From Podarcis vaucheri (taxonomy: Eukaryota), in NCBI GenBank assembly GCA_965113315.1, contig OZ220363.1: DNA of 64,000 nt. One strand, 5' to 3'. A model generated the notes under the pieces. The model searched no databases. It was not told the origin of the DNA and saw only the letters and a list, made by a program, of their open reading frames with translations. A program made the translations under genes and the position numbers. Each line of letters starts with the position of its first letter. Within the stretch, counting starts at the first letter, position 1. This document shows, piece after piece, positions 7,901 through 62,508 of the stretch.

Positions 7901-10900
7901 CTTCCAGCTGCTGCCGCCACATGCAAAAGGGTCCAGCCACTCTCATCCAGGGGTGAGTTGAGCAATTGCTGCGGGGTGATACCATTGCAGTCATCTGCTT
8001 TATCTGCTGTGCTATTATCTCTCCCCAGAAGATGCTGTAGTGCCTTCAGGTCTCCCATCTTACAAGCTGTGAACAAGGCATCTTGTAACGATGTGCTAAG
8101 ACCTAGAGGAAGGAAGGAAGGAAGAGTCTCACAATGAAATATCCATGAAATATCCATGTTACCTATAAGGGTAAACAGAATGTCAAGTCTTGGATCTGCC
8201 ACTCCCTTAACCAGCACAGGCTTCCAACCTACAATAATGGCCCAAATGGCAAGTTGTTATAGAACCCCTTATTATAAAACGGAGTGGGGAAGTGCAGATC
8301 TTGCTGATGCTCACACAACCACCCCCAAACTCACCATCATATTTCAGACAATTCTGGGTCTTGGGTGACTCTGTTCTGGGCAACAAAGCCTTGGGCTCTT
8401 TCACACCTCCTGAAGTCTCAGTGGAGGACTCTGCTTCAAAAGAAAGAACATGCAAGGTGTTGTTTCCTCTCCAGTTCATTTTAGTCTATCAGTACCATTC
8501 TGATCCCCGTAACTTTGTCTGGAATGACCCAGAAATGCATGAATGATGGATTCAGGTGAACTAACCAGCATGCAGGACCCATGTTCTAAAAGCCCACCCC
8601 TCTCTCCCAACTTGCTCCAAGTGTCACTAACATCATGGCTAATAGGATGCAGCATGAGGAGAGCAGTCCCAGAGAACCATCAGTTTTGTGATGCTGATAC
8701 TGTTCCACACAAACAGAAAGACAGGAGAACTGCGGTTCCCTTTTTCTGCTTGGGAACAGCTGATCATCAACGGCACTGCTCTGACTCCAAAGCTGCTGCA
8801 GCAGCAGCTTCTGCTTTTCACCTTAAGACTAGAGATGGATGCAGTCCAACCTATAACATTGAGATGATGCAGATTCAGAAGGGGTAATTTAGAAGGGTGG
8901 TTTAAGACAGCCTTCATTTGCGCTCTCTTAAATCTTTGGAACCATCTCAGCTGACACTGACTTCTCTGGGTCTGCGGTGGCTCCTCTTCAGCCACACAAG
9001 TCATTCCATAAAAGGCAGGTAGTATAATGAAATCCAGCACACCTATCAGATTTCACTTTAAAGCCCCAGTCCTCATGAGTAAAGAAAGCAGAACAAAGAT
9101 GTGAAAGCACTGCCTCCCAGAAAGTAGAAGAGGGTGGACTCTCTTGCGGCAAGTACAAAACTGATTTCCCCATAATGCAATGTCCCCTCCACCCCGCCTC
9201 TGTCTACAGGAATCCTATGTGTTCTATTTTATCATGTTGGTTGCCATTCTTCTATTGCACATTTTTAACCTAGAACAGATTACCTAACAGAGACAGCGGT
9301 GCTTTGATCAGGTAAGATGTTGCCATTTCTGCAAATGCTGAATGCAGTTTGTCCCAGGGGTTTGCTTTAATGGAATATCCAATGCTTGCACAACTTTCTT
9401 CCCAAACGGACTGTATTTCAGTTTCTGGGTTGTAGCTTCTGACTTTCTGTGAACTAAGATCCCTCTAGATTATGGCCCAGGGCCCATCATGGCTTTCTTA
9501 TCCTGGGAGCCTGCATCTTGATAGGAAGCAGCTGCCAAGGACACCAAACTGTGGGGCTCTGGTCGGTGTCTCTCAAGGCAGGCAAATAATTTAGCCATTC
9601 TAGAAAGAGAATGTACCCACTATCTGTACCTAATAATAGGTCCATTACCTCAGCCACCTACCCATCAGTGTTTTTTGTTTCTTCCTTCTCTTCTTGCGAT
9701 TTAATTTTGGTTCCACTTCAAATTCTCGGAGTTCCAGTGTACTCAGTGTCTGCTCTACCAACTCCAGCTGCTGTAGACTTTTCTCTTCCTCCTCCTTCTC
9801 CTCCTCTGGCTTTGCTGCAGAGACTGTAAGAAAACGGGATCGCGGTTAAGCCTTTCCTTCTCAGCTTCTGATGAACAAAGTAGGGATCATTCAATGAACT
9901 TGAGGATTGGGGTATGGAAGGTGATCCAAATCAGCCTATCAGTCCTCCGTCAGCTGAACTGCAGCCACTGTTAGATCACATCCTACACATTAGCAGCCAC
10001 CATCGTGATTTCAGCATTTTCCTGCCTGCAGCCCTCTTTCAGGGCTCTCCATAAAGCCATTTCCCAGTGGAGGCAGAATCCCCTGCTTTACTGCTTTTAG
10101 CAGCCCATAGTGGTCTTTCCACCCAATAGCCTAGATAATTATGATGGTAAAAAGTGAACATAGCATCTGCAGTGGATGATGGATTGCTACAAGGGCAAGG
10201 ATGGCAAGGCTCTCCAACTCACTAGTGTCTTGACTCTGTGAAGATGCTTCATCCAAAGGAAGGACCTTTTTCCAGCTCTTCCGAGGGGAGGAAATCAAAT
10301 CTGCCACTGCTGTGTCTTTGCCTGTCAAAAGAATCAGAATGGTGTTTTCTAGGATGGAAATCCTCTTGGTTTCATACCCTCCACTCCCACTCCTAAGGGC
10401 AGATTTCTAGATAGACAATTCCAGCAAGAGCAAAAGAGCTAAAAGAAAGAAACAAGGTCAGACTAGAGATATGGGAGGGAAATGACACACACACTCCAAT
10501 ACTCCACCCCATCCCTGGGCCTCCACATCTCTAGGCGAGAACCAAGATTATAGTCAGAAACAGTATACACAAAGACTTTGGGGCATTATTTCAAGTACTT
10601 GGGTACTAAAAGCTGTGCTCACCATACACTTGCAGACTGCTCAGAACCCCATGCACCCGCTGCACCTCGTGGAAGGTGGCTCTCCGGGTGCTGAAAGGAA
10701 TGCCCCGGATACGGGGATCATCTCGCTGAAGAGGGCTATTTTTGCTGCCAAAAAACCGAGCTCGGTTGGTGCGAGGGGCACGAAGGAAGATACACTCTGC
10801 TCCTTGCAAATGCCCTGTCCAGCTGGCCAACAACTCCTGAATATCCTGCAGGAAAAGACAAGTATAACAGGTAGGCCCATCGTTGTTGCCTTTAGTGCAG

Positions 10901-13900
10901 CCGAAGTAACCACAATGAAGGCTGAGTTGCATAGGGCCTGAATGTAACCATTGGTCACCTATTTCCAAGAGATCCCCAGTGCCATTTATACATAAAATAT
11001 ATCATTTCAAAAGAGAGAATGCAGAAACAGTCTGAATGGTATGGAAGAGCTTCATTTCTCAATATGGAATCTGCAGCAAGAAGGGATTACTTAGAGATAC
11101 CCAGTGCAATGCCTTCCAGATGTGGTTGGACTCCAACTCCCATCAGCCCCAGCCAACAGGACCAATGGTCAAGGATGATGGGACTCATTGATGGACTGCA
11201 TCTGGAAGACACCACATTGCCTGCCCTGGTCTACATCATTGGGACTAGAGTGGTCTATCCTCCTCTTCTGTCACTGTTTTAATGCACAGACTACTGACAA
11301 GAACTGGCATAGACTTGCAGGAAAAGTCAACTGCATCTTTCCTTTGTGAAGGCAGAACAGCTGGGACAATCTTACTCAAACAGCAAAGCTCTCAAATAGC
11401 TGTCACCTTTTCATTTTGTGTGTTCACCCTTGGTTCTACTAGGGTCCGCACTCACCTTGAGCAAGGCAGCCTCATTGTAGCGCCGCAGTGTGGCCCCAGC
11501 TGATTTTGGCATAGACCCTTGAGCATCTCTCACTCCTTGGGCTGTCCCTCGGCGAGCTCGCACTGTATACCGATGGAACGTCTTATGCTCCAGCACCTCA
11601 TTTCTGGGAAGAAAGTGACGGTAAGCCTACAGCAAAGACCAACATCCAGAATAATCATCTTAGCATGAATGTCTTCACTAGGAAACAAGTCTAGCCAAAA
11701 TGGACTCAGGTTTTATCCATACCAGGAATATGGAACCTGAGGCCTTCTAGATGTTGCTGGACTCCAACCACCACTGGTCCCAACTAGAATGGCCAATGGT
11801 CAGGGATGATGGGGCTCTGTAGTCTGACACTATCTGGAGGGCCACAGGTTCCCCACTCTTTTGTAAGCAATATCCAGATGGATGGATCAGATGTCTTCGT
11901 TCGTGTTAGGCTGAAGTGGCTTAGGAAAGGATGAAGACCTTTTATCTCACATCCTCAAGCTCACAAAATGGGCTGCTTGATATTGCATGCATCCATGAAG
12001 ACCTCAAGTTTCTCCAGGGAGGAGGTGCTGGTGAGTCAGTATTGAGTGGAGACTGTTTTTGCACACACACATTATGTGGTTGTTCTTGGCTGAATTTGCT
12101 TTGCCTCATCATGATTATGCTTTGCGTCCACTTCTAGCCTTCCTGCCTACTGATAAACTCCTTGAATCCAGGGCATGGAGAACCTGTGGCCCTGAAGATG
12201 ATGTTGGACTACATCTCCAACATCCACCTGGGCATTGGTCATGTTGGCTGGAGATGATGGGAGTTGGAATCCAACATCAGGAAGGCCAAAGGTTCCTCAT
12301 CTGATTTGCACCTTGAATGGGGTCCAGCAGATTACAGATATAAAGCACTCTACATTCCCCACCCACCCAATCTCTCTCTTCATGAACTTCCAGGAAACTG
12401 CTTAGTGGAGACCATGAGATGAGCATTAACACTGGCCTGGAAGCACATGTGGGATCGTGGTTTATCAGCCTTCTGACACAGTCACACTCTTAAGGCAGCT
12501 GTTACAGCTCGCAAGTTGACCCGCATGACAGACATCCCCCTCTGTGTTCTTACCCCTTAAAGACAGCTCCTGCAAAGTGTCCCCCGCCAGCCATTAGGAT
12601 CACCCAGGAGGTTCCTGAGCTCTGTCTCTGAAGGGACGCCACTAGCTCTTCAGGCTCCTCCACACTGCCCTGGATGGACAAAAGACCCCTTCAGTTAGCG
12701 AGAGGTTACTGACTGAGCAATGAGAGCAGCTTTCAGCCTGGCTGTTAAATAGGGATGGGCAGGGTGTTAGCTGGTCCCAAACAGACAAAAGGATTTCAAG
12801 GGATGTTCCCTTCCCACAGAAGTTTTGGAAGTGGGGGAAATGCTTCTTTCATCCTGCAGAAATTCAGGTTTCTTCTAGGAAAGCATCAGGTACAAAACAG
12901 AAAGCATAGCTGTCAACGTTTCCCCTTTTTAAAGGGAAATTCCCTTATTCCAAATAGGATTCCTCGCAAGAAAAGGGAAAAGTTGACAGCTATGAGAAAG
13001 AATAATATCAGGAAAGCAAAATGGGCCAGTTTGATGTTAAAAATTAATGGGCAAGGAAAAGTCAGTCAGGTGACTAGAGGAACTGTGCAGGACTCAAGAG
13101 AGAAACCCACACATTTATGGCAACAAGCCAACACAGGCCCAACTGGCTGAAATTATAATACCTGCTTGGGAGGAAGAGTTTGCAATTAAAGCAAGATAGT
13201 AGATGGGAAAATTAAGACCAACCACTTTTATGCTTATTGCAACAGACACTAGACTTCCTTAAAACCTGGCCACAGCATTATCCTCTTGGTGTGTGTGTGT
13301 GTGTGTGTGTGTGTTCGTGATAGGCATTTATCATTTGGTGAGAGACAGCTGGTAACTAAAACAGGAAGGGACCAAAAGCCAGAAAAGGAATGAGGTCCAG
13401 TAGGCTCTTTGTGACATGCCTTCATAGTGTTTAGCACACAGCGATAGACTGAGATGAGCTGGCCTTGGGCATTTCTGAACAGAACCCGCTGGGAGCGTCG
13501 ACATGGAGAGGGGCTCCGATGACTGCCTTCACTGTTGGGTGGTTCAGATTCATTGTCCAAGTCAGAGTCACTGGAATCCGACCCAGAGATGCTGGAGACA
13601 TCACCTGTGGACCAAGGTAGTAACAGAAAAGAAAATCACACCATCAAGAAGGAAGTGCATCATGTAACGGATTCCAGAAATCCTATTTCTGGAATTTTAT
13701 ATCTGAAACTCCTGCCTACAAGGCAGAAAGACAGAGCATTCTCATGCAAAGAAGACAGTTTGGACTGGTAAAGCTGGAAAATTCTCTACTTAAGACAGCT
13801 CAGGACCACAGCAAGGAGGAAATATATGTGTGGATCTAGACGACTGAGCTCCTTTGGACATACATTTGACTAATGGAGTACGTTGTCATAGCTAGAGTCA

Positions 13901-17670: not shown

Positions 17671-19062
17671 TATAGGCTAAAGGCTTCTATTTCTTATTAT
17701 AAATACATGGTAGGGCAGTAAGCGGGTTGTTTTGTAAACAGCTTTGAGGGTGTGTGTGTGTCTGTTTTAGCAACCAAGCAATGAATACATTTTATGAAAT
17801 AAATAAACAAAACAAAACAAGCACAACCCTAAATCTGCCTGTTTTAGGTCAAATCAATTATTCTTGGAGACACCTTTTCCCCTCAGATTCATGAAAGTGC
17901 ACCTGCATACATGGTTACCTGTGAAGAACATTTTGTGCATATTGTCACTGAAGTTCCTTCTAAATCAGGGCTAAATTCTATTACTGTATTGAGGCCCTAC
18001 TCCTTTCATATTTTAATATCTTTTGGCCCTGGTACAACACTGAAATAAGAAGTTGCTGGGGCAGAAATAATCAATTCTATTTTACAACAGCATAAGATAC
18101 TAAGCTCTGGGATCAGATGACCAGCACACAGTTGCTCTCAAACTTTCTGTGTCCCAACTAGTGTCCAAAAGATCCAAAATCTCTTGGTGCCTCTATGATA
18201 TGTCTCAATTTCCTAGTGGTGCTTGCAACAGATATTATTACAGTATTAAAAGTCTTTAACGGTTAGTCAAGAGCTGGAAAGAGTTAGTCTGAAAAGCTGT
18301 GTGTCTTGGAGAATTGTGCAGTAGTTCACTCACAACTGTACTGAGGTGCAACTGTGCACTAAAAATAATGACCAGGTCAAGGAAGGTCAGAAAATGAAGG
18401 ATACGTCAGCTGTTTCAGACTGACTGATAAGTCATTCACCCCACCAAAGGTGAAGGTGGGGCAGAAAGGTCACCCAACCAGTTGTGCAGGCTACATACAC
18501 AGTCCCAGAGTCAAGTATAAGAAGATCACATCATTTGTCTACACTGCAAGCAGCAACATAACAACAGAGCAAGAGACAGAGGAAAAAACTTCTCACGAGT
18601 CATAATCGAGACACAGAAACCACAGGACAAAACAGGCTAGCTATTATTATTTTAATTACTTAAGGCTAGCTATTGAGTCATAAGGATTACACATGCACAA
18701 GAAGTTACAGCAAAGGAAGAAAAGGCCAGTGCGGGTGGGGGCCGACAAGTGTCAAGAAAATCAATCAGGGTATTTGTCAGGGTATTTTCCCCCCTGGGGG
18801 AAAAACCAACAATATCCTTTGACATGCTATTAAAGTATCCCAAGAATTCTTTGAGATAAGTATTAGTCCTGAGAGCAGAGCCACCATTCACTGCCAGGGG
18901 TTCATATGACGGGGTGAACCATTGTTCAGGCGCCGTGTCAGCTGCCACGTTCAGCAGGGCTGGTGGAGAAATGCAGCGGGGAAGAGGCCAAGAGAGGTAA
19001 GCCGCGCCACCCCGAGCGTTTCAGGAGGCCCCGGGGATGCTGGCGGAACAGGGGGCGCTTAC

Positions 19063-19130
19063 CACTCTCCGGGCTGGAAAGCACACGAGGCGCCCCTGCT
19101 TGTCTGGCTGCGGACCTTCGCCCTCTGGCG
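19063..19130 (-). other. ANKZF1: Probable non-coding first exon of ANKZF1 (5' end approximate)
   Basis: Minus-strand donor GTG|GTAAGC at 19062 inside the CpG island. The start-codon exon has an acceptor (17114-17115) only 3 nt before the ATG, so an upstream non-coding exon is required. Confidence 0.7.
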
Positions 19131-19329
19131 CACGTCACTTCCGTTTGTCACGGACCCCGCCCTCTCCCGTCGGAGACAATCCTTTCCCCGCCCCGCCTCC
19201 TCCCCTTCCTCCCCCCACCGCAGCTTTCCCATTGGCCCTCCCCGAGCCCACCTCCTCGTCCTTTCCCGGCCTTCCATTGGCAGCGGAAAGCGCCCGCCGG
19301 TCGGGACAAGGGAGGAGGCGAGTGGGGCG

Positions 19330-19426
19330 GAGAGAGAGAGAGAGAGTGACAGACAGAGCCTGGGAAGTCGCGGCGGCGGAGGAGGCTGAGCCCCGGGTCC
19401 GGTCACTAGGGGCGACTGTCCTGGAG
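19330..19426 (+). other. ATG9A: Probable non-coding first exon of ATG9A (5' end approximate)
   Basis: Strong donor GAG|GTGAGC at 19427 in the CpG island. The start-codon exon begins with an acceptor at 24286-24287. Confidence 0.75.
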
Positions 19427-19867
19427 GTGAGCCGCGCAGTCGCCGCCGGGAAAGGGATGGCCGGGGGGGGGGAGGACGGGGACGTGGGCCTCGCCTTGGA
19501 ACCCCCGCCGCGCCGCCTCCCTCCCGCTTCCCAAGTAAACAACCTCCGAGGAAGGCCCCTCCCGGCCCGGCTCAGCCAAAACAAAACAGCCTCGGAGGAG
19601 CTGCCTGGGGCCGCCCAAGGAAAAGGCCCCCCCCCCGGTCCCTCTCTCTGCAGCGGTGCCTTTCCAACTTGGGAGGAGGGATCCGGCGGATGAGCTGGCT
19701 CCCCTCCGGCTCTTCCTCACCTGGCGAAGCAGGCCGTCTCGCCCTGGATTCCCTCTCTTTTGATTCGCGGCGCCGGGGGAGCAGAACCAGCCCCTTCTTC
19801 GCCAATCAACCCTACAAAAGGGGCCTGGAGCTGGTCCTGTTTCCGGTTGGAGAGTGTTGAGTGGAAC

Positions 19868-20134
19868 CAGTGCTGGATTTACGTATAAATTTTGGGGCCC
19901 CAAAAAAAATTAAAAGGAAAAAAACACCAAAATATAAGATAAAACTAAATAAATTAAAACCCACATACAGCAACAGTGTTTTGTGTTGTGTATGGACCTA
20001 TTAGGTCCATAAATTACCATATAGCATATATTCAACACAAAAAACAGGAACAATTTGTTGCTGACAGCTGGACATATAAAGGGCCCTATTACCTTCAGTA
20101 GCTTAGGGCCTCAGCAAACCTAAATCCAGCCCTG
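19868..20134. mobile_element. Non-autonomous hAT transposon in ATG9A intron 1
   Basis: TIRs CAGTGCTGGATTTA / TAAATCCAGCCCTG; perfect 8-bp TSD AGTGGAAC (19860-19867, 20135-20142). Confidence 0.88.
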
Positions 20135-33300: not shown

Positions 33301-35657
33301 TGTGAAATTAAGGCTGTAAATGTGATATTTATGTGGAGGCCTGTGATACTTGGATTGTATCAGGTCCCAAACTGGGCTTGCTTGGGACACACGTCAATGT
33401 CACCATAGTGTTCTAGTTGGCTGCCCATTAATACTCCCTGCCATTCTCAGTTACACAAGCAGCATGCCCAGTTGGAGCCTGAGCGGCACTTGTGGCACCG
33501 GCGAGAGAGTGATGAGAGTGGTGAAAGTGCCCAGGAGGAGCCCGATGCTCATCAGGGCACCCCAAGCAGTGCCATTCCCCGTTCAGCCAGTTATCCTTTC
33601 GCCTCGCCTCGCCAGGCTGGTGATGAGACAGCTGCTCTGCAAGCCGGCTTCCAGCGCCGATATGGTGGTGTCTCAGGTATGTTTCAGGAACACCAAACTC
33701 ACAGCACTTCCATATTCCTTAGCCAGAAAAGGCTTTATTTCCTGCCAAACCCTGCACATACACATGCTGGCATTTCTTGTTAACTACAGGGCAATGAGAG
33801 AAAAAGATTAGATATCAGTCTGACATGCTGCTTGACAGTTTTGGTGTACCCTTTTGATGACATGGCCAGCGCATCATATATAAGAGGCAAGCCTTTACCT
33901 GTGCTGCCTACACTCTCAGATTGCCTCAAGCCTTTACTCCTTGCTGATCAGCAGGTTTGGAGCACTGGCTAGCAGTGCTACAAGAGTGGCATTATGAGTT
34001 TGGGAAGTTCAAAAATCCATTTTGCTTTCGTTGCTGCCGTTTCAGAAGGCACCATTTTCTCTGTGATTTGGGCTCTCATTTTCTTTAGTTTTGATTTTCA
34101 GAAGGCTCAATTTTCTTTGGTTATGAATTTCCAGAAGGGTAACCATGCCAGTCCATGAAAGCATGTGGCACCTTAAAGACTAATTTATGACATATTCATA
34201 CCTCATCAGATGGAGTAGACTATGGTTCATAATAAATTTATTAGTCTTAAATGGTGCCACAAGAGTCTTCGTTGTTCTGGTCACAAAGCTATCCATATAC
34301 TTATTTCTTTCAACAAGGGGCATGGCCAAAGCTGGCAGGGTAGGGTGTTGCTTAATAGACTTGGTTAGAGGAGCAGGTGGAAACAAAAAAGACCAAGAGT
34401 ACTTGCAAGATATTATATTTCCACTTACGCCACTGTTTCCCAGCTACTGTATCTGTGTTGGGTGGTAATGAGGAACAGAGCAGACTGGAAGCCCCAAACA
34501 GATTTTGCAGCAAACTGATCTCATTTAACTTTGGCTACCCCATCCGGTGGTTATCTTTCCCTCTTTGTTTTCCCACAGACCCTGGCATGGTGCACAGAGC
34601 CCCATCACACTTCGCTCGGCTGCCACTTGGGGGGTGGGCTGAAGATGGCCAGACTGCTCGGCACCCAGAGCCTGTGCCAGAGGAGAGCTTGGAAGATGAG
34701 TTGCCACCTCAGATACACAAGGTACAGCCTGGTTGATACTTGGGCATTGGCAATGGCTGTGTCATGAAACCAGAGGAATCTGCAGCCTCTTAATGCAGCT
34801 ATATGTATTACTGCACTATCATCACCAGAAGCTACCTGGCCAAAGACTAGTTACTACAAAAATAATTTGATTTTGTGTTTTGGAAGGCTCTACTGATATG
34901 AACTAGTCGGGCTTTCAGGAACTCATACACAAAGCAGACCAAATAAATCAGGCAATGCTATCCTGTAAGCTGCCCCGTGTTCCTTGGTTGAAGGGAGAAA
35001 TTTAAATTTATAAATTAAAGAAAGAAAGCCATGTTTGGGTAGACTCCCCCCCCCTCAAGTGTCATCTCAGAGTAAGAGGGAAGAGAGTAATATGAGAAGT
35101 TGAGAGAGTAAGCCAGGCTTCCTCAACCTTGGCCCTCCAGATGTTTTTGGCCTACAACTCCCATGATCCCTAGCTAGCAGGACCAGTGGTCAGGGATGGT
35201 GGGAATTGTAGTCTCAAAACATCTGGAGGGCCGAGGTTGAGGAAGCCTGGAGTAAGCTATGGAGGGACAGAGAGCAATGGCAGGCATTCTGTGAAAGATC
35301 TCTAGCTTCAGTGTGCTAGCCACACACAAAAGAAGGCTGGGGGCATTTTCTGCCTTGGAAAGGGGAATTTCAGTATATGCAGCATTTCTGCCCCTCCATC
35401 AGCTGTAGCTGTCAAAATGTTCTCTTCCATATGGGTTTTAGAGGTGGAGGATCCTTATTCTCCTTTGCATGTAGTCAGCTGATATTGCTAAATAGCCTAC
35501 AGCTTGCTTAAAAATAAATACTGAAAGTTTCAGGAGGTGGGTTCTTTGTTTGGCACAAAATCTGGAGTATTCAGAGCTTTGCTTTGACCCAGTCTTTCTC
35601 CTCACTGTCCCCCTTCCCAAATAACTTCCTTTGCCTTCCCAATTCCTTCAGGTGTAG
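24328..35657 (+). CDS. ATG9A: Autophagy-related protein 9A (lipid scramblase); complete, 850 aa
   Basis: Exons 24328-24430 (MAHFDTEYQRLEASYNDSPPGEEDLMVHVAEGSK), 24904-24947, 25392-25456, 25772-25933, 26494-26635, 28149-28897, 30026-30179, 30458-30637, 30855-31100, 32105-32319, 32858-32975, 33451-33676, 34579-34721, 35652-35657 (GTG TAG). Total 2553 nt with consistent phases. Near-identical to vertebrate ATG9A motifs (WHHIENLDLFFSRVYNLHQKNG, LTELDIYHRILRF, RSASYP AMPK/14-3-3 site, C-terminal LPPQIHKV). Confidence 0.98.
24948..25391 (+). other. ATG9A: U12-type (minor spliceosome) AT-AC intron of ATG9A
   Basis: 5' site ATATCCTT at 24948, branch site TCTTTGAC at 25372-25379, terminal AC at 25390-25391. 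Joining restores the conserved FFSR|VYNLHQKNG. Confidence 0.93.
27380..28120 (-). mobile_element. L2/CR1-clade LINE ORF2 3' fragment (decayed), with perfect 51-bp tandem duplication 27587-27688
   Basis: Minus-strand peptides VHNLGIILDPLVSLEAQVASVAWSAFHQL and YKASNISGPQHLKDHLFPYE are typical of the region downstream of LINE reverse transcriptase. Confidence 0.8.
35114..35249. mobile_element. Intact palindromic hAT MITE in the last ATG9A intron
   Basis: Long inverted arms CAGGCTTCCTCAACCT(T)GGCCCTCCAGATGTTTT / AAAACATCTGGAGGGCCGAGGTTGAGGAAGCCTG; perfect 8-bp TSD GAGTAAGC (35106-35113, 35250-35257). Confidence 0.93.

Positions 35658-43369: not shown

Positions 43370-62508
<19,139 letters not shown>

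What the first reader, a model, noticed from the sequence alone, without database searches (positions are those of the whole stretch)
11988..12300. Orphan copy of the ABCB6 exon-4 donor region embedded antisense in an ANKZF1 intron, 41 kb from its source
Seen: 11988-12040 is 46/53 identical to ABCB6 53405-53457. This includes a perfect 23-nt block GGAGGAGGTGCTG|GTGAGTCAGT (12018-12040 = 53435-53457) that spans the 5' splice site. A second, intronic block (12118-12157 vs 53540-53579, 33/40) and a following MITE are also shared, so the copy arose at DNA or pre-mRNA level, not from spliced mRNA. The 5' half of the exon and its acceptor are absent. Inference: ANKZF1 is transcribed from the minus strand, so its intron RNA is complementary to the ABCB6 exon-4 donor. 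That exon is 93 nt and phase 1-1, so skipping it keeps the frame. This is the geometry of a natural cis splice-switching antisense element between neighbouring genes. A neutral duplication relic is the simpler explanation.
Basis: partly seen in the sequence, partly recalled or inferred. Interest (0 to 1): 0.8.

Follow-up and report, generated by a model that had tools for sequence, protein, structure and literature searches.

The report
Decaying ABCB6 exon-fragment copy in ANKZF1 intron
A piece about 320 bases long from the lizard's ABCB6 gene (end of one exon, start of the next intron and a mini-transposon) was copied long ago into an intron of the nearby ANKZF1 gene, and everything I could test says it is a decaying by-product of DNA repair or transposon activity, not a splicing regulator.

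Summary
11988-12040 matches ABCB6 53405-53457 at 46/53 (E 3e-12), with a perfect 23-nt run across the 5' splice site. Colinear homology then runs through the intron and a shared palindromic hAT-type MITE, to about 12303-12325 against 53713-53745. The copy lies on the + strand inside ANKZF1 intron 11604-12553, and ANKZF1 is on the minus strand, so the antisense geometry is correct.

The regulatory reading is not supported:
- Substitution divergence is even along the copy (exon part 0.16, intron blocks 0.13-0.17, MITE 0.26).
- The 23-nt run is not unusual (P about 0.1).
- One mismatch is a recent synonymous change in the source, and the copy did not follow it.
- MITE pairs give the same two pre-mRNAs complementarity that is as strong or stronger.
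- In two RNA-seq runs of a congener, all 24 junction reads include the exon (20 for exon 3 to 4, 4 for exon 4 to 5). No skipping joint reached the listing threshold.

The host intron, most of which is this insert with its MITEs, is held in five other closely related organisms, so the copy most likely predates their split.

Best reading: an old, neutral, DNA-level or pre-mRNA-templated patch duplication with a passenger MITE. Earlier scan notes report hAT elements carrying gene fragments elsewhere in this genome. A composite-MITE origin here remains possible but unproven. Low interest.

The parts
11988..12030 (+). Copy of the last 43 nt of ABCB6 exon 4 (source 53405-53447); 36/43 identical; frame no longer meaningful
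12031..12168 (+). Copy of the first ~155 nt of ABCB6 intron 4. It includes an intact GTGAGT donor (12031-12040, 10/10) and the 33/40 block 12118-12157. Many indels in 12041-12117
12169..12303 (-). MITE copy 'm121' (palindromic, CAGG..CCTG termini, hAT-type family), homologous in position and orientation to the source MITE 53603-53713; a passenger of the duplication
12304..12325 (+). Probable last ~20 nt of the duplicated segment beyond the MITE (16/21 matches with 4 gap columns vs 53721-53745); weak, right border uncertain
   Evidence: extended flank not significant
53355..53447 (+). Source: ABCB6 exon 4 (93 nt, phase 1-1); only 53405-53447 was copied
53448..53745 (+). Source: 5' part of ABCB6 intron 4 with the degenerate MITE 'm53' (53603-53713, 17-nt internal deletion) and ~30 nt beyond
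11723..11861 (+). Second MITE copy 'm117', inverted relative to m121 and 126 nt left of the copy. It has no counterpart at the source. It is either an independent insertion or the other end of a composite
11604..12553 (-). ANKZF1 intron (950 nt) that hosts everything above, between VLRF1-domain exons ending at 12554 and starting at 11603

Best explanation
An old, selectively neutral micro-duplication. A stretch of about 320-340 bp of unspliced ABCB6 sequence was copied, in the same orientation, into an ANKZF1 intron 41.4 kb away on the same chromosome. The stretch held the last 43 nt of exon 4, the first ~155 nt of intron 4, a resident hAT-type MITE and perhaps ~20 nt beyond it. The most likely route (inferred, not shown) is repair of a DNA break in the ANKZF1 intron with a patch templated from nearby ABCB6 DNA or pre-mRNA. 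This is the class-2 'templated sequence insertion' type: no poly(A), possibly a 4-nt TGCA microhomology at the left junction. The MITE was a passenger. Since then the copy and the source have drifted apart at roughly the neutral rate. The antisense relation to the ABCB6 donor follows from the two genes being on opposite strands and has no detectable effect on ABCB6 splicing.
For: The homology is real and colinear over exon, intron and MITE. The MITE lies at the same site and in the same orientation in both places, so the template was unspliced. There is no poly(A) at the 3' end. Substitution divergence is even: exon part 7/43 = 0.16, intron A 0.13, intron B 0.17, MITE 0.26. A perfect run of 23 or more has P = 0.105 given 7 mismatches in 53 columns. 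It has P = 0.19-0.64 for 188 nt at 13-20% divergence. Exon mismatches are 3/29 at codon positions 1-2 and 4/14 at position 3, as expected if the source changes only synonymously while the copy drifts (counted by eye). Place 53419 reads C in a congener's ABCB6 mRNA and C in the copy, but T in the window's ABCB6. So that mismatch is a recent synonymous change in the source, not matched in the copy. The host intron is held at 0.68-0.76 of sampled words in five other organisms. The insert with its two MITEs makes up about 60% of that intron, so the copy very probably predates their split. That split corresponds to about 1.1% divergence by my arithmetic on the word share, far less than the ~16% between copy and source. 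RNA-seq of a congener shows 20 reads joining exon 3 to 4 and 4 reads joining exon 4 to 5. No exon 3 to 5 joint was listed. No Rfam family covers 11988-12168.
Against: No empty site was obtained, so the exact borders, the junction features and therefore the repair mechanism are inferred. A DNA template and a pre-mRNA template cannot be told apart. Two inverted MITEs bracket the copy, and earlier scan notes report composite or gene-carrying hAT elements elsewhere in this genome, so a transposon-mediated origin is not excluded. The RNA test used another species of the genus, two libraries of unknown tissue and only 24 junction reads. The anchors for a skip read were short (44 and 40 nt). Skipping at a few percent, or only in some tissues, is therefore not excluded. 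Genome-wide copy number could not be measured.
Confidence: 0.85

Rival explanations
1. Natural splice-switching antisense element. ANKZF1 intron RNA pairs with the ABCB6 exon-4 donor, hides it from U1 snRNP and causes in-frame skipping of the 93-nt exon.
For: The geometry is right. The copy is on the + strand in a minus-strand gene. The predicted duplex is -87.6 kcal/mol and includes a 23-bp perfect helix over the donor. The exon is 93 nt and phase 1-1. In the predicted fold of the intron RNA, the antisense segment sits in the large loop closed by the two MITEs and is about half unpaired.
Against: All 24 junction reads include exon 4, and no 48188>54105 joint was listed. The core is not conserved beyond chance. 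The source changed at 53419 without a matching change in the copy. MITE pairs 11129-11183/47240-47294 (-104 kcal/mol) and 11732-11858/47212-47337 (-161 kcal/mol) give the same two pre-mRNAs equal or stronger complementarity. Such pairing potential is therefore commonplace. From general knowledge, a 950-nt intron is short-lived and would have to act in trans on a transcript made 41 kb away. The exon encodes about 31 residues just before human ABCB6 residue 322, in the first helix region of the core transmembrane domain. Skipping it would probably give a dead protein (inference).
Confidence: 0.03
2. Cargo of a composite hAT element ('Pack-hAT' type). The two inverted MITEs (11723-11861 and 12169-12303) and the 307 nt between them moved as one unit into the ANKZF1 intron, carrying the ABCB6 fragment with them.
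For: The MITEs are inverted relative to each other and bracket the copy. The family is hAT-like: copy 35114-35249 has CAGG..CCTG termini and a perfect 8-bp target duplication. The outer 8-mers of the putative composite (11715-11722 and 12304-12311) match at 4/8 and all four mismatches are transitions. m117 alone shows only 1/8 and m121 alone 3/8 (read, post hoc). Earlier scan notes describe composite and gene-fragment-carrying hAT elements elsewhere in this genome (unchecked leads).
Against: The source locus has only one MITE, the homologue of m121, and it sits at the same site relative to the shared flank. Nothing at the source matches m117 or the 126 nt between m117 and the copy. Homology seems to continue about 20 nt past m121, which a transposon end should not allow. 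A 4/8 target duplication is within reach of chance (P about 0.11 for matches alone). No second copy of the composite is known.
Confidence: 0.09
3. The shared sequence is a member of a multi-copy repeat family that happens to overlap the ABCB6 exon, so the two places are not a source and its copy.
For: Part of the shared segment is a repeat: the MITE has at least seven copies in this window.
Against: The exon part codes for conserved ABCB6 protein sequence contiguous with the next exon, which matches human ABCB6 structures. The non-MITE part 11988-12168 has exactly one other match in 64 kb. RNA depth over 53345-53744 is low, on one strand and without loose ends. This contrasts with the pile-ups of hundreds of reads over true repeats at 48345-48744 and 49545-49944. 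A look-up by sequence in the scan's notes found nothing, though a blank there carries no weight.
Confidence: 0.03

Closest known systems
Class 2 templated sequence insertions (TSI/TSIP; Onozawa et al., reviewed in PMC5110952)
   Same: A short patch (tens to hundreds of bp) templated from a distant locus, which may include intronic sequence, sits in unrelated DNA. It has no poly(A) and no clear target duplication. Microhomology at a junction is possible (TGCA at 11984-11991).
   Different: Those were described in human cells and populations as recent or polymorphic events with known empty alleles. Here the event is old (~16% diverged), fixed in several lizard species, and no empty site is available. 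The junction features are therefore unverified. The donor lies only 41 kb away on the same chromosome.
Gene-fragment capture by DNA transposons (Pack-MULE/Pack-hAT, composite MITEs; earlier scan notes s1-849501, s1-854978, s1-850197 for this genome)
   Same: An exon end with its splice donor sits in another gene's intron, bracketed by hAT-type MITE copies.
   Different: One of the MITEs is also present at the donor locus at the same site, so it is part of the copied DNA, not a capturing vehicle. The other MITE and 126 nt of the 'cargo' have no counterpart at the donor. No convincing target duplication and no other copies are known.
Natural antisense transcripts that mask splice sites, and synthetic splice-switching oligonucleotides (general reviews PMC10196821, PMC10761088, found by title and not read; examples such as the Zeb2 NAT are from my own knowledge)
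   Same: RNA complementary to a 5' splice site could in principle block U1 binding and change exon use.
   Different: Known natural cases are transcripts that overlap their target locus in cis and are themselves stable RNAs. Here the complementary RNA would be part of a short-lived intron of another gene, imperfect outside 23 nt. No change in the target's splicing is seen.

Membership tests
Templated sequence insertion, class 2 (DSB-repair patch) | Insert is a colinear copy of a stretch found elsewhere in the genome | tested here: met
   11988-~12325 is colinear with 53405-~53745
Templated sequence insertion, class 2 (DSB-repair patch) | No poly(A) tract or cryptic poly(A) signal at the 3' end (distinguishes it from LINE-mediated class 1) | tested here: met
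   No A-run at or after 12303-12330 on the + strand; the age of the copy weakens this test
Templated sequence insertion, class 2 (DSB-repair patch) | No target-site duplication; NHEJ signs (microhomology, small deletions) at the junctions | tested here: inconclusive
   TGCA is repeated at the left junction (11984-11991). An 8-mer CCTTGAAT recurs at 12160-12167 and 12310-12317. Without an empty site neither can be interpreted
Templated sequence insertion, class 2 (DSB-repair patch) | An empty (pre-insertion) allele exists in relatives | not testable with these tools
   All five related organisms hold most of the intron.
Composite / Pack-hAT transposon | Transposon ends (here whole MITEs) at both borders, in inverted orientation | tested here: met
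   m117 is '+' and m121 is '-' against the family profile. They pair over 102 bp in the predicted intron RNA fold
Composite / Pack-hAT transposon | 8-bp target-site duplication flanking the whole unit | tested here: inconclusive
   11715-11722 vs 12304-12311: 4/8, all mismatches transitions
Composite / Pack-hAT transposon | Homology to the donor gene is confined to the cargo between the ends | tested here: not met
   Homology to the ABCB6 locus includes m121 itself and probably ~20 nt beyond it. The 126 nt next to m117 are not from ABCB6
Splice-site-masking natural antisense RNA | Complementarity that covers a splice site of the target | tested here: met
   53 nt at 87% including 23 perfect bp over the donor; duplex -87.6 kcal/mol
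Splice-site-masking natural antisense RNA | The target exon is alternatively used | tested here: not met
   20 + 4 inclusion joints and no skip joint listed in two RNA-seq runs of a congener; low power below about 10%
Splice-site-masking natural antisense RNA | The complementary segment is kept by selection (slower decay than its flanks, or co-variation with the target) | tested here: not met
   Even divergence; run length not unusual; an uncompensated source change at 53419
Splice-site-masking natural antisense RNA | The antisense RNA accumulates as a stable species | not tested
   Six small contig sets guessed to be RNA hold 15-35% of the intron's words, but their nature is unknown

The most novel reading that the evidence does not exclude
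The fragment is a tissue-restricted or low-level natural splice-switching antisense. In cells where ANKZF1 pre-mRNA is abundant, its intron, held open as a loop by the two paired MITEs, pairs with the ABCB6 exon-4 donor and tunes down functional ABCB6 by in-frame exon skipping. The present data exclude skipping only as a major event in two libraries of a sister species.
Probability: 0.02. Interest if true: 0.75.

Novelty: new member of a known kind. Interest (0 to 1): 0.12.

Why it matters
As it stands it matters little. It is one more fixed, decaying micro-duplication of a gene fragment, useful at most as a phylogenetic marker for wall lizards. It is also a small data point on how unspliced gene pieces with resident MITEs get scattered in a MITE-rich lizard genome. 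If the antisense idea were true it would be a rare natural trans-acting splice-switching element between neighbouring genes, but nothing measured here points that way.

Tried and rejected
- Extending the homology. Smith-Waterman of 11862-11987 vs 53150-53404 and of 12300-12560 vs 53714-54110 scored no better than shuffles (103/300 and 31/300). A 21-nt match 12644-12664 vs 54186-54206 falls in an ANKZF1 exon and is chance.
- Testing whether m121 and m53 are each other's closest relatives. Pairwise identities (0.58 vs 0.50-0.56 to other copies) are too noisy to tell. m53 is simply the most degenerate copy.
- Target-site duplications of m117, m121 and the putative composite were inconclusive.
- Fetching orthologous lizard introns through protein words. 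The 68-aa ORF over the copy gave no candidate. The 120-aa ANKZF1 exon ORF gave one distant 59% hit from a 2.7-kb contig (not followed). Lizard whole-genome contigs seem not to be gene-called in that collection, so a blank means nothing.
- The scan's own notes by place, sequence and words had nothing on this locus.
- Rfam found no family on the copy, only sub-threshold mir-5408 hits on MITE hairpins.
Exons were searched one by one by reference.
- I did not use the large representative-protein search, because no claim here rests on it.

Full report
**What is there**

11988-12040 vs 53405-53457 is 46/53 identical, ungapped, with E 3e-12. The last 23 columns are identical. Weaker colinear homology continues.

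A gap-tolerant global alignment of 11988-12325 with 53405-53745 gives these figures:

| Segment | Match / mismatch |
|---|---|
| Exon part | 36 / 7 |
| First ten intron bases | 10 / 0 |
| 12041-12117 (49 gap columns) | 48 / 7 |
| 12118-12157 | 33 / 7 |
| MITE | 84 / 29 |
| Next 22 nt | 16 / 5 |

Beyond these limits neither flank aligns better than shuffled sequence. The duplicated unit is therefore about 320-340 bp. Its left border is near 11988, and its right border is at or about 20 nt past the MITE.

**Gene context**

ORFs on the minus strand at 12550-12681, 11411-11596 and 10606-10968 hit successive parts of the VLRF1 release-factor domain. 7846-8217 hits ankyrin repeats. This is the ANKZF1/Vms1 architecture. 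Reading the splice sites places the host intron at 11604-12553.

On the + strand, the exon after the source matches human ABCB6 structures at E 1e-26, residues 322-384. ABCB6 coding exons lie at about 43.3-43.9 kb, 45.6-45.8 kb, 47999-48188 and 53355-53447, so 'exon 4' is correct.

The source exon is 93 nt and phase 1-1. Its borders are confirmed by RNA joints with GT..AG ends. I searched exons one at a time by reference and built no joined spliced model.

**The MITE**

The window holds at least seven copies of a ~135-bp palindromic element. Copy 35114-35249 shows CAGG..CCTG termini and a perfect 8-bp target duplication, GAGTAAGC. That is the signature of a hAT-type MITE.

The copy at 12169-12303 and the degenerate one at 53603-53713 have the same orientation against the family profile. 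They abut homologous left flanks: the 11 nt before the terminus match 8/11. The MITE was therefore already in ABCB6 intron 4 when the segment was copied, and it travelled as a passenger.

A second MITE (11723-11861), inverted relative to the first, lies 126 nt to the left of the copy. It has no counterpart at the source.

**Is the core specially conserved?**

No.
- With 7 mismatches in 53 columns, a perfect run of 23 or more occurs in 10.5% of random placements. Over the 188 non-MITE bases at 13-20% divergence it occurs in 19-64% of trials.
- Substitution divergence is about the same in the exon-derived part (0.16) and the intron-derived parts (0.13-0.17).
- Within the exon part, mismatches fall 3/29 on codon positions 1-2 and 4/14 on position 3, and all four third-position differences are synonymous in the ABCB6 frame. 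This is expected if the source accepts only synonymous changes while the copy drifts freely.
- The 13 exonic bases of the core encode the invariant Gly-Gly-Gly-Ala motif, and the 10 intronic bases are the donor. The source side cannot change there, so identity only requires that the copy escaped mutation in 23 sites.

**RNA evidence**

The look-up of sequencing runs on the host intron found it at 0.98 of sampled words in one organism, presumably the source of the window. It was at 0.68-0.76 in five others. By (1-d)^31 this is about 1.1% divergence. The insert plus its MITEs makes up about 60% of the intron, so those shares imply the copy is present in all of them. Copy and source are ~16% diverged, so the event is roughly an order of magnitude older than that split (inference).

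- Joint 48188>53355 has 3 + 17 reads.
- Joint 53447>54105 has 1 + 3 reads.
- All have the first mate on the minus strand, consistent with + strand RNA in a stranded library.
- No 48188>54105 joint was listed at a threshold of 3 reads and 2%.

Power is limited. There are 24 reads, the anchors are 44 and 40 nt, the tissues are unknown and the species is a sister one. Skipping as a substantial isoform is excluded in these samples; rare skipping is not.

The same table shows that the congener's exon 4 reads G at 53392 and C at 53419. Both are synonymous third positions. At 53419 the copy (12002) also has C. The window species' ABCB6 therefore changed after the split and lowered the complementarity, without any matching change in the copy.

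**Is the complementarity unusual?**

The two genes are on opposite strands, so any same-strand repeat shared by them makes their pre-mRNAs complementary. Two MITE pairs give predicted duplexes as stable as the exon copy or more so:

| Pair | Identity | Predicted duplex |
|---|---|---|
| 11129-11183 / 47240-47294 | 91% over 55 nt | -104 kcal/mol |
| 11732-11858 / 47212-47337 | 74% over 128 nt | -161 kcal/mol |
| Exon copy 11988-12040 / 53405-53457 | 87% over 53 nt | -88 kcal/mol |

The exon copy is special only in where it would pair.

**Mechanism of origin**

The features are a colinear unspliced patch, no poly(A), a donor 41 kb away in cis, and a possible TGCA microhomology at the left junction. 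They fit break repair with a templated patch, as in class-2 templated sequence insertions (PMC5110952). This step is inferred.

Earlier notes of this scan identify the genome as a wall lizard. They report composite hAT MITEs and a hAT element carrying an exon and donor of another gene. I took these as leads and tested a composite reading here.
- For it: the two MITEs are inverted, and they pair over 102 bp in the predicted intron RNA fold. The outer 8-mers match 4/8 with only transitions as mismatches.
- Against it: the right-hand MITE is itself part of the copied ABCB6 DNA. Homology seems to run past it. The left MITE and the adjoining 126 nt are foreign to ABCB6.

I rate the composite origin at about 9%.

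**Verdict**

Novelty is that of a new instance of a known kind, and interest is low.

Noticed in passing
window 35106-35257: MITE copy 35114-35249 with long terminal inverted repeats (CAGG..CCTG ends) and a perfect 8-bp target duplication GAGTAAGC on both sides. It is the best-preserved copy in the window and the basis for calling the family hAT-type.
   Followed up: partly
window 11119-11202 (-) and 12199-12279 (+): The MITE hairpins give sub-threshold Rfam hits to the miRNA precursor family mir-5408 (30.8 and 25.9 bits against a gathering score of 90). That miRNA family may itself derive from this MITE family.
   Followed up: no
window 11723-11861 and 12169-12303: The two inverted MITEs in the ANKZF1 intron are predicted to pair over 102 bp in the intron RNA, looping out 307 nt. 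This is a long intronic double-stranded RNA of the kind ADAR enzymes edit; editing was not tested.
   Followed up: partly
window 12160-12167 and 12310-12317: A perfect 8-nt direct repeat CCTTGAAT sits on both sides of the MITE m121, 1 nt from its left terminus but 6-7 nt from its right terminus. The chance of such a repeat in these small windows is about 0.3%. It could be a displaced target duplication or a coincidence; unexplained.
   Followed up: partly
window 48345-48744 and 49545-49944 (ABCB6 intron 3): RNA-seq reads pile up in the hundreds on both strands. Most are only 90-95% alike and have consistent loose ends (for example at 48486, 48559, 49766 and 49799). These are interspersed repeats whose other copies are widely transcribed, not ABCB6 expression.
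   Followed up: no
window 53392 and 53419 (ABCB6 exon 4): The congener with RNA data reads G and C where the window has T and T. Both changes are synonymous, and they are the only exon-4 differences listed.
   Followed up: yes
window 18900-19900: A very GC- and CpG-rich stretch just upstream of the first ANKZF1 exons on the minus strand. It is likely the promoter island shared head-to-head with the next gene on the + strand (ATG9A by synteny, from my own knowledge). Judged only from the Gly/Arg/Pro-rich ORFs in all frames.
   Followed up: no
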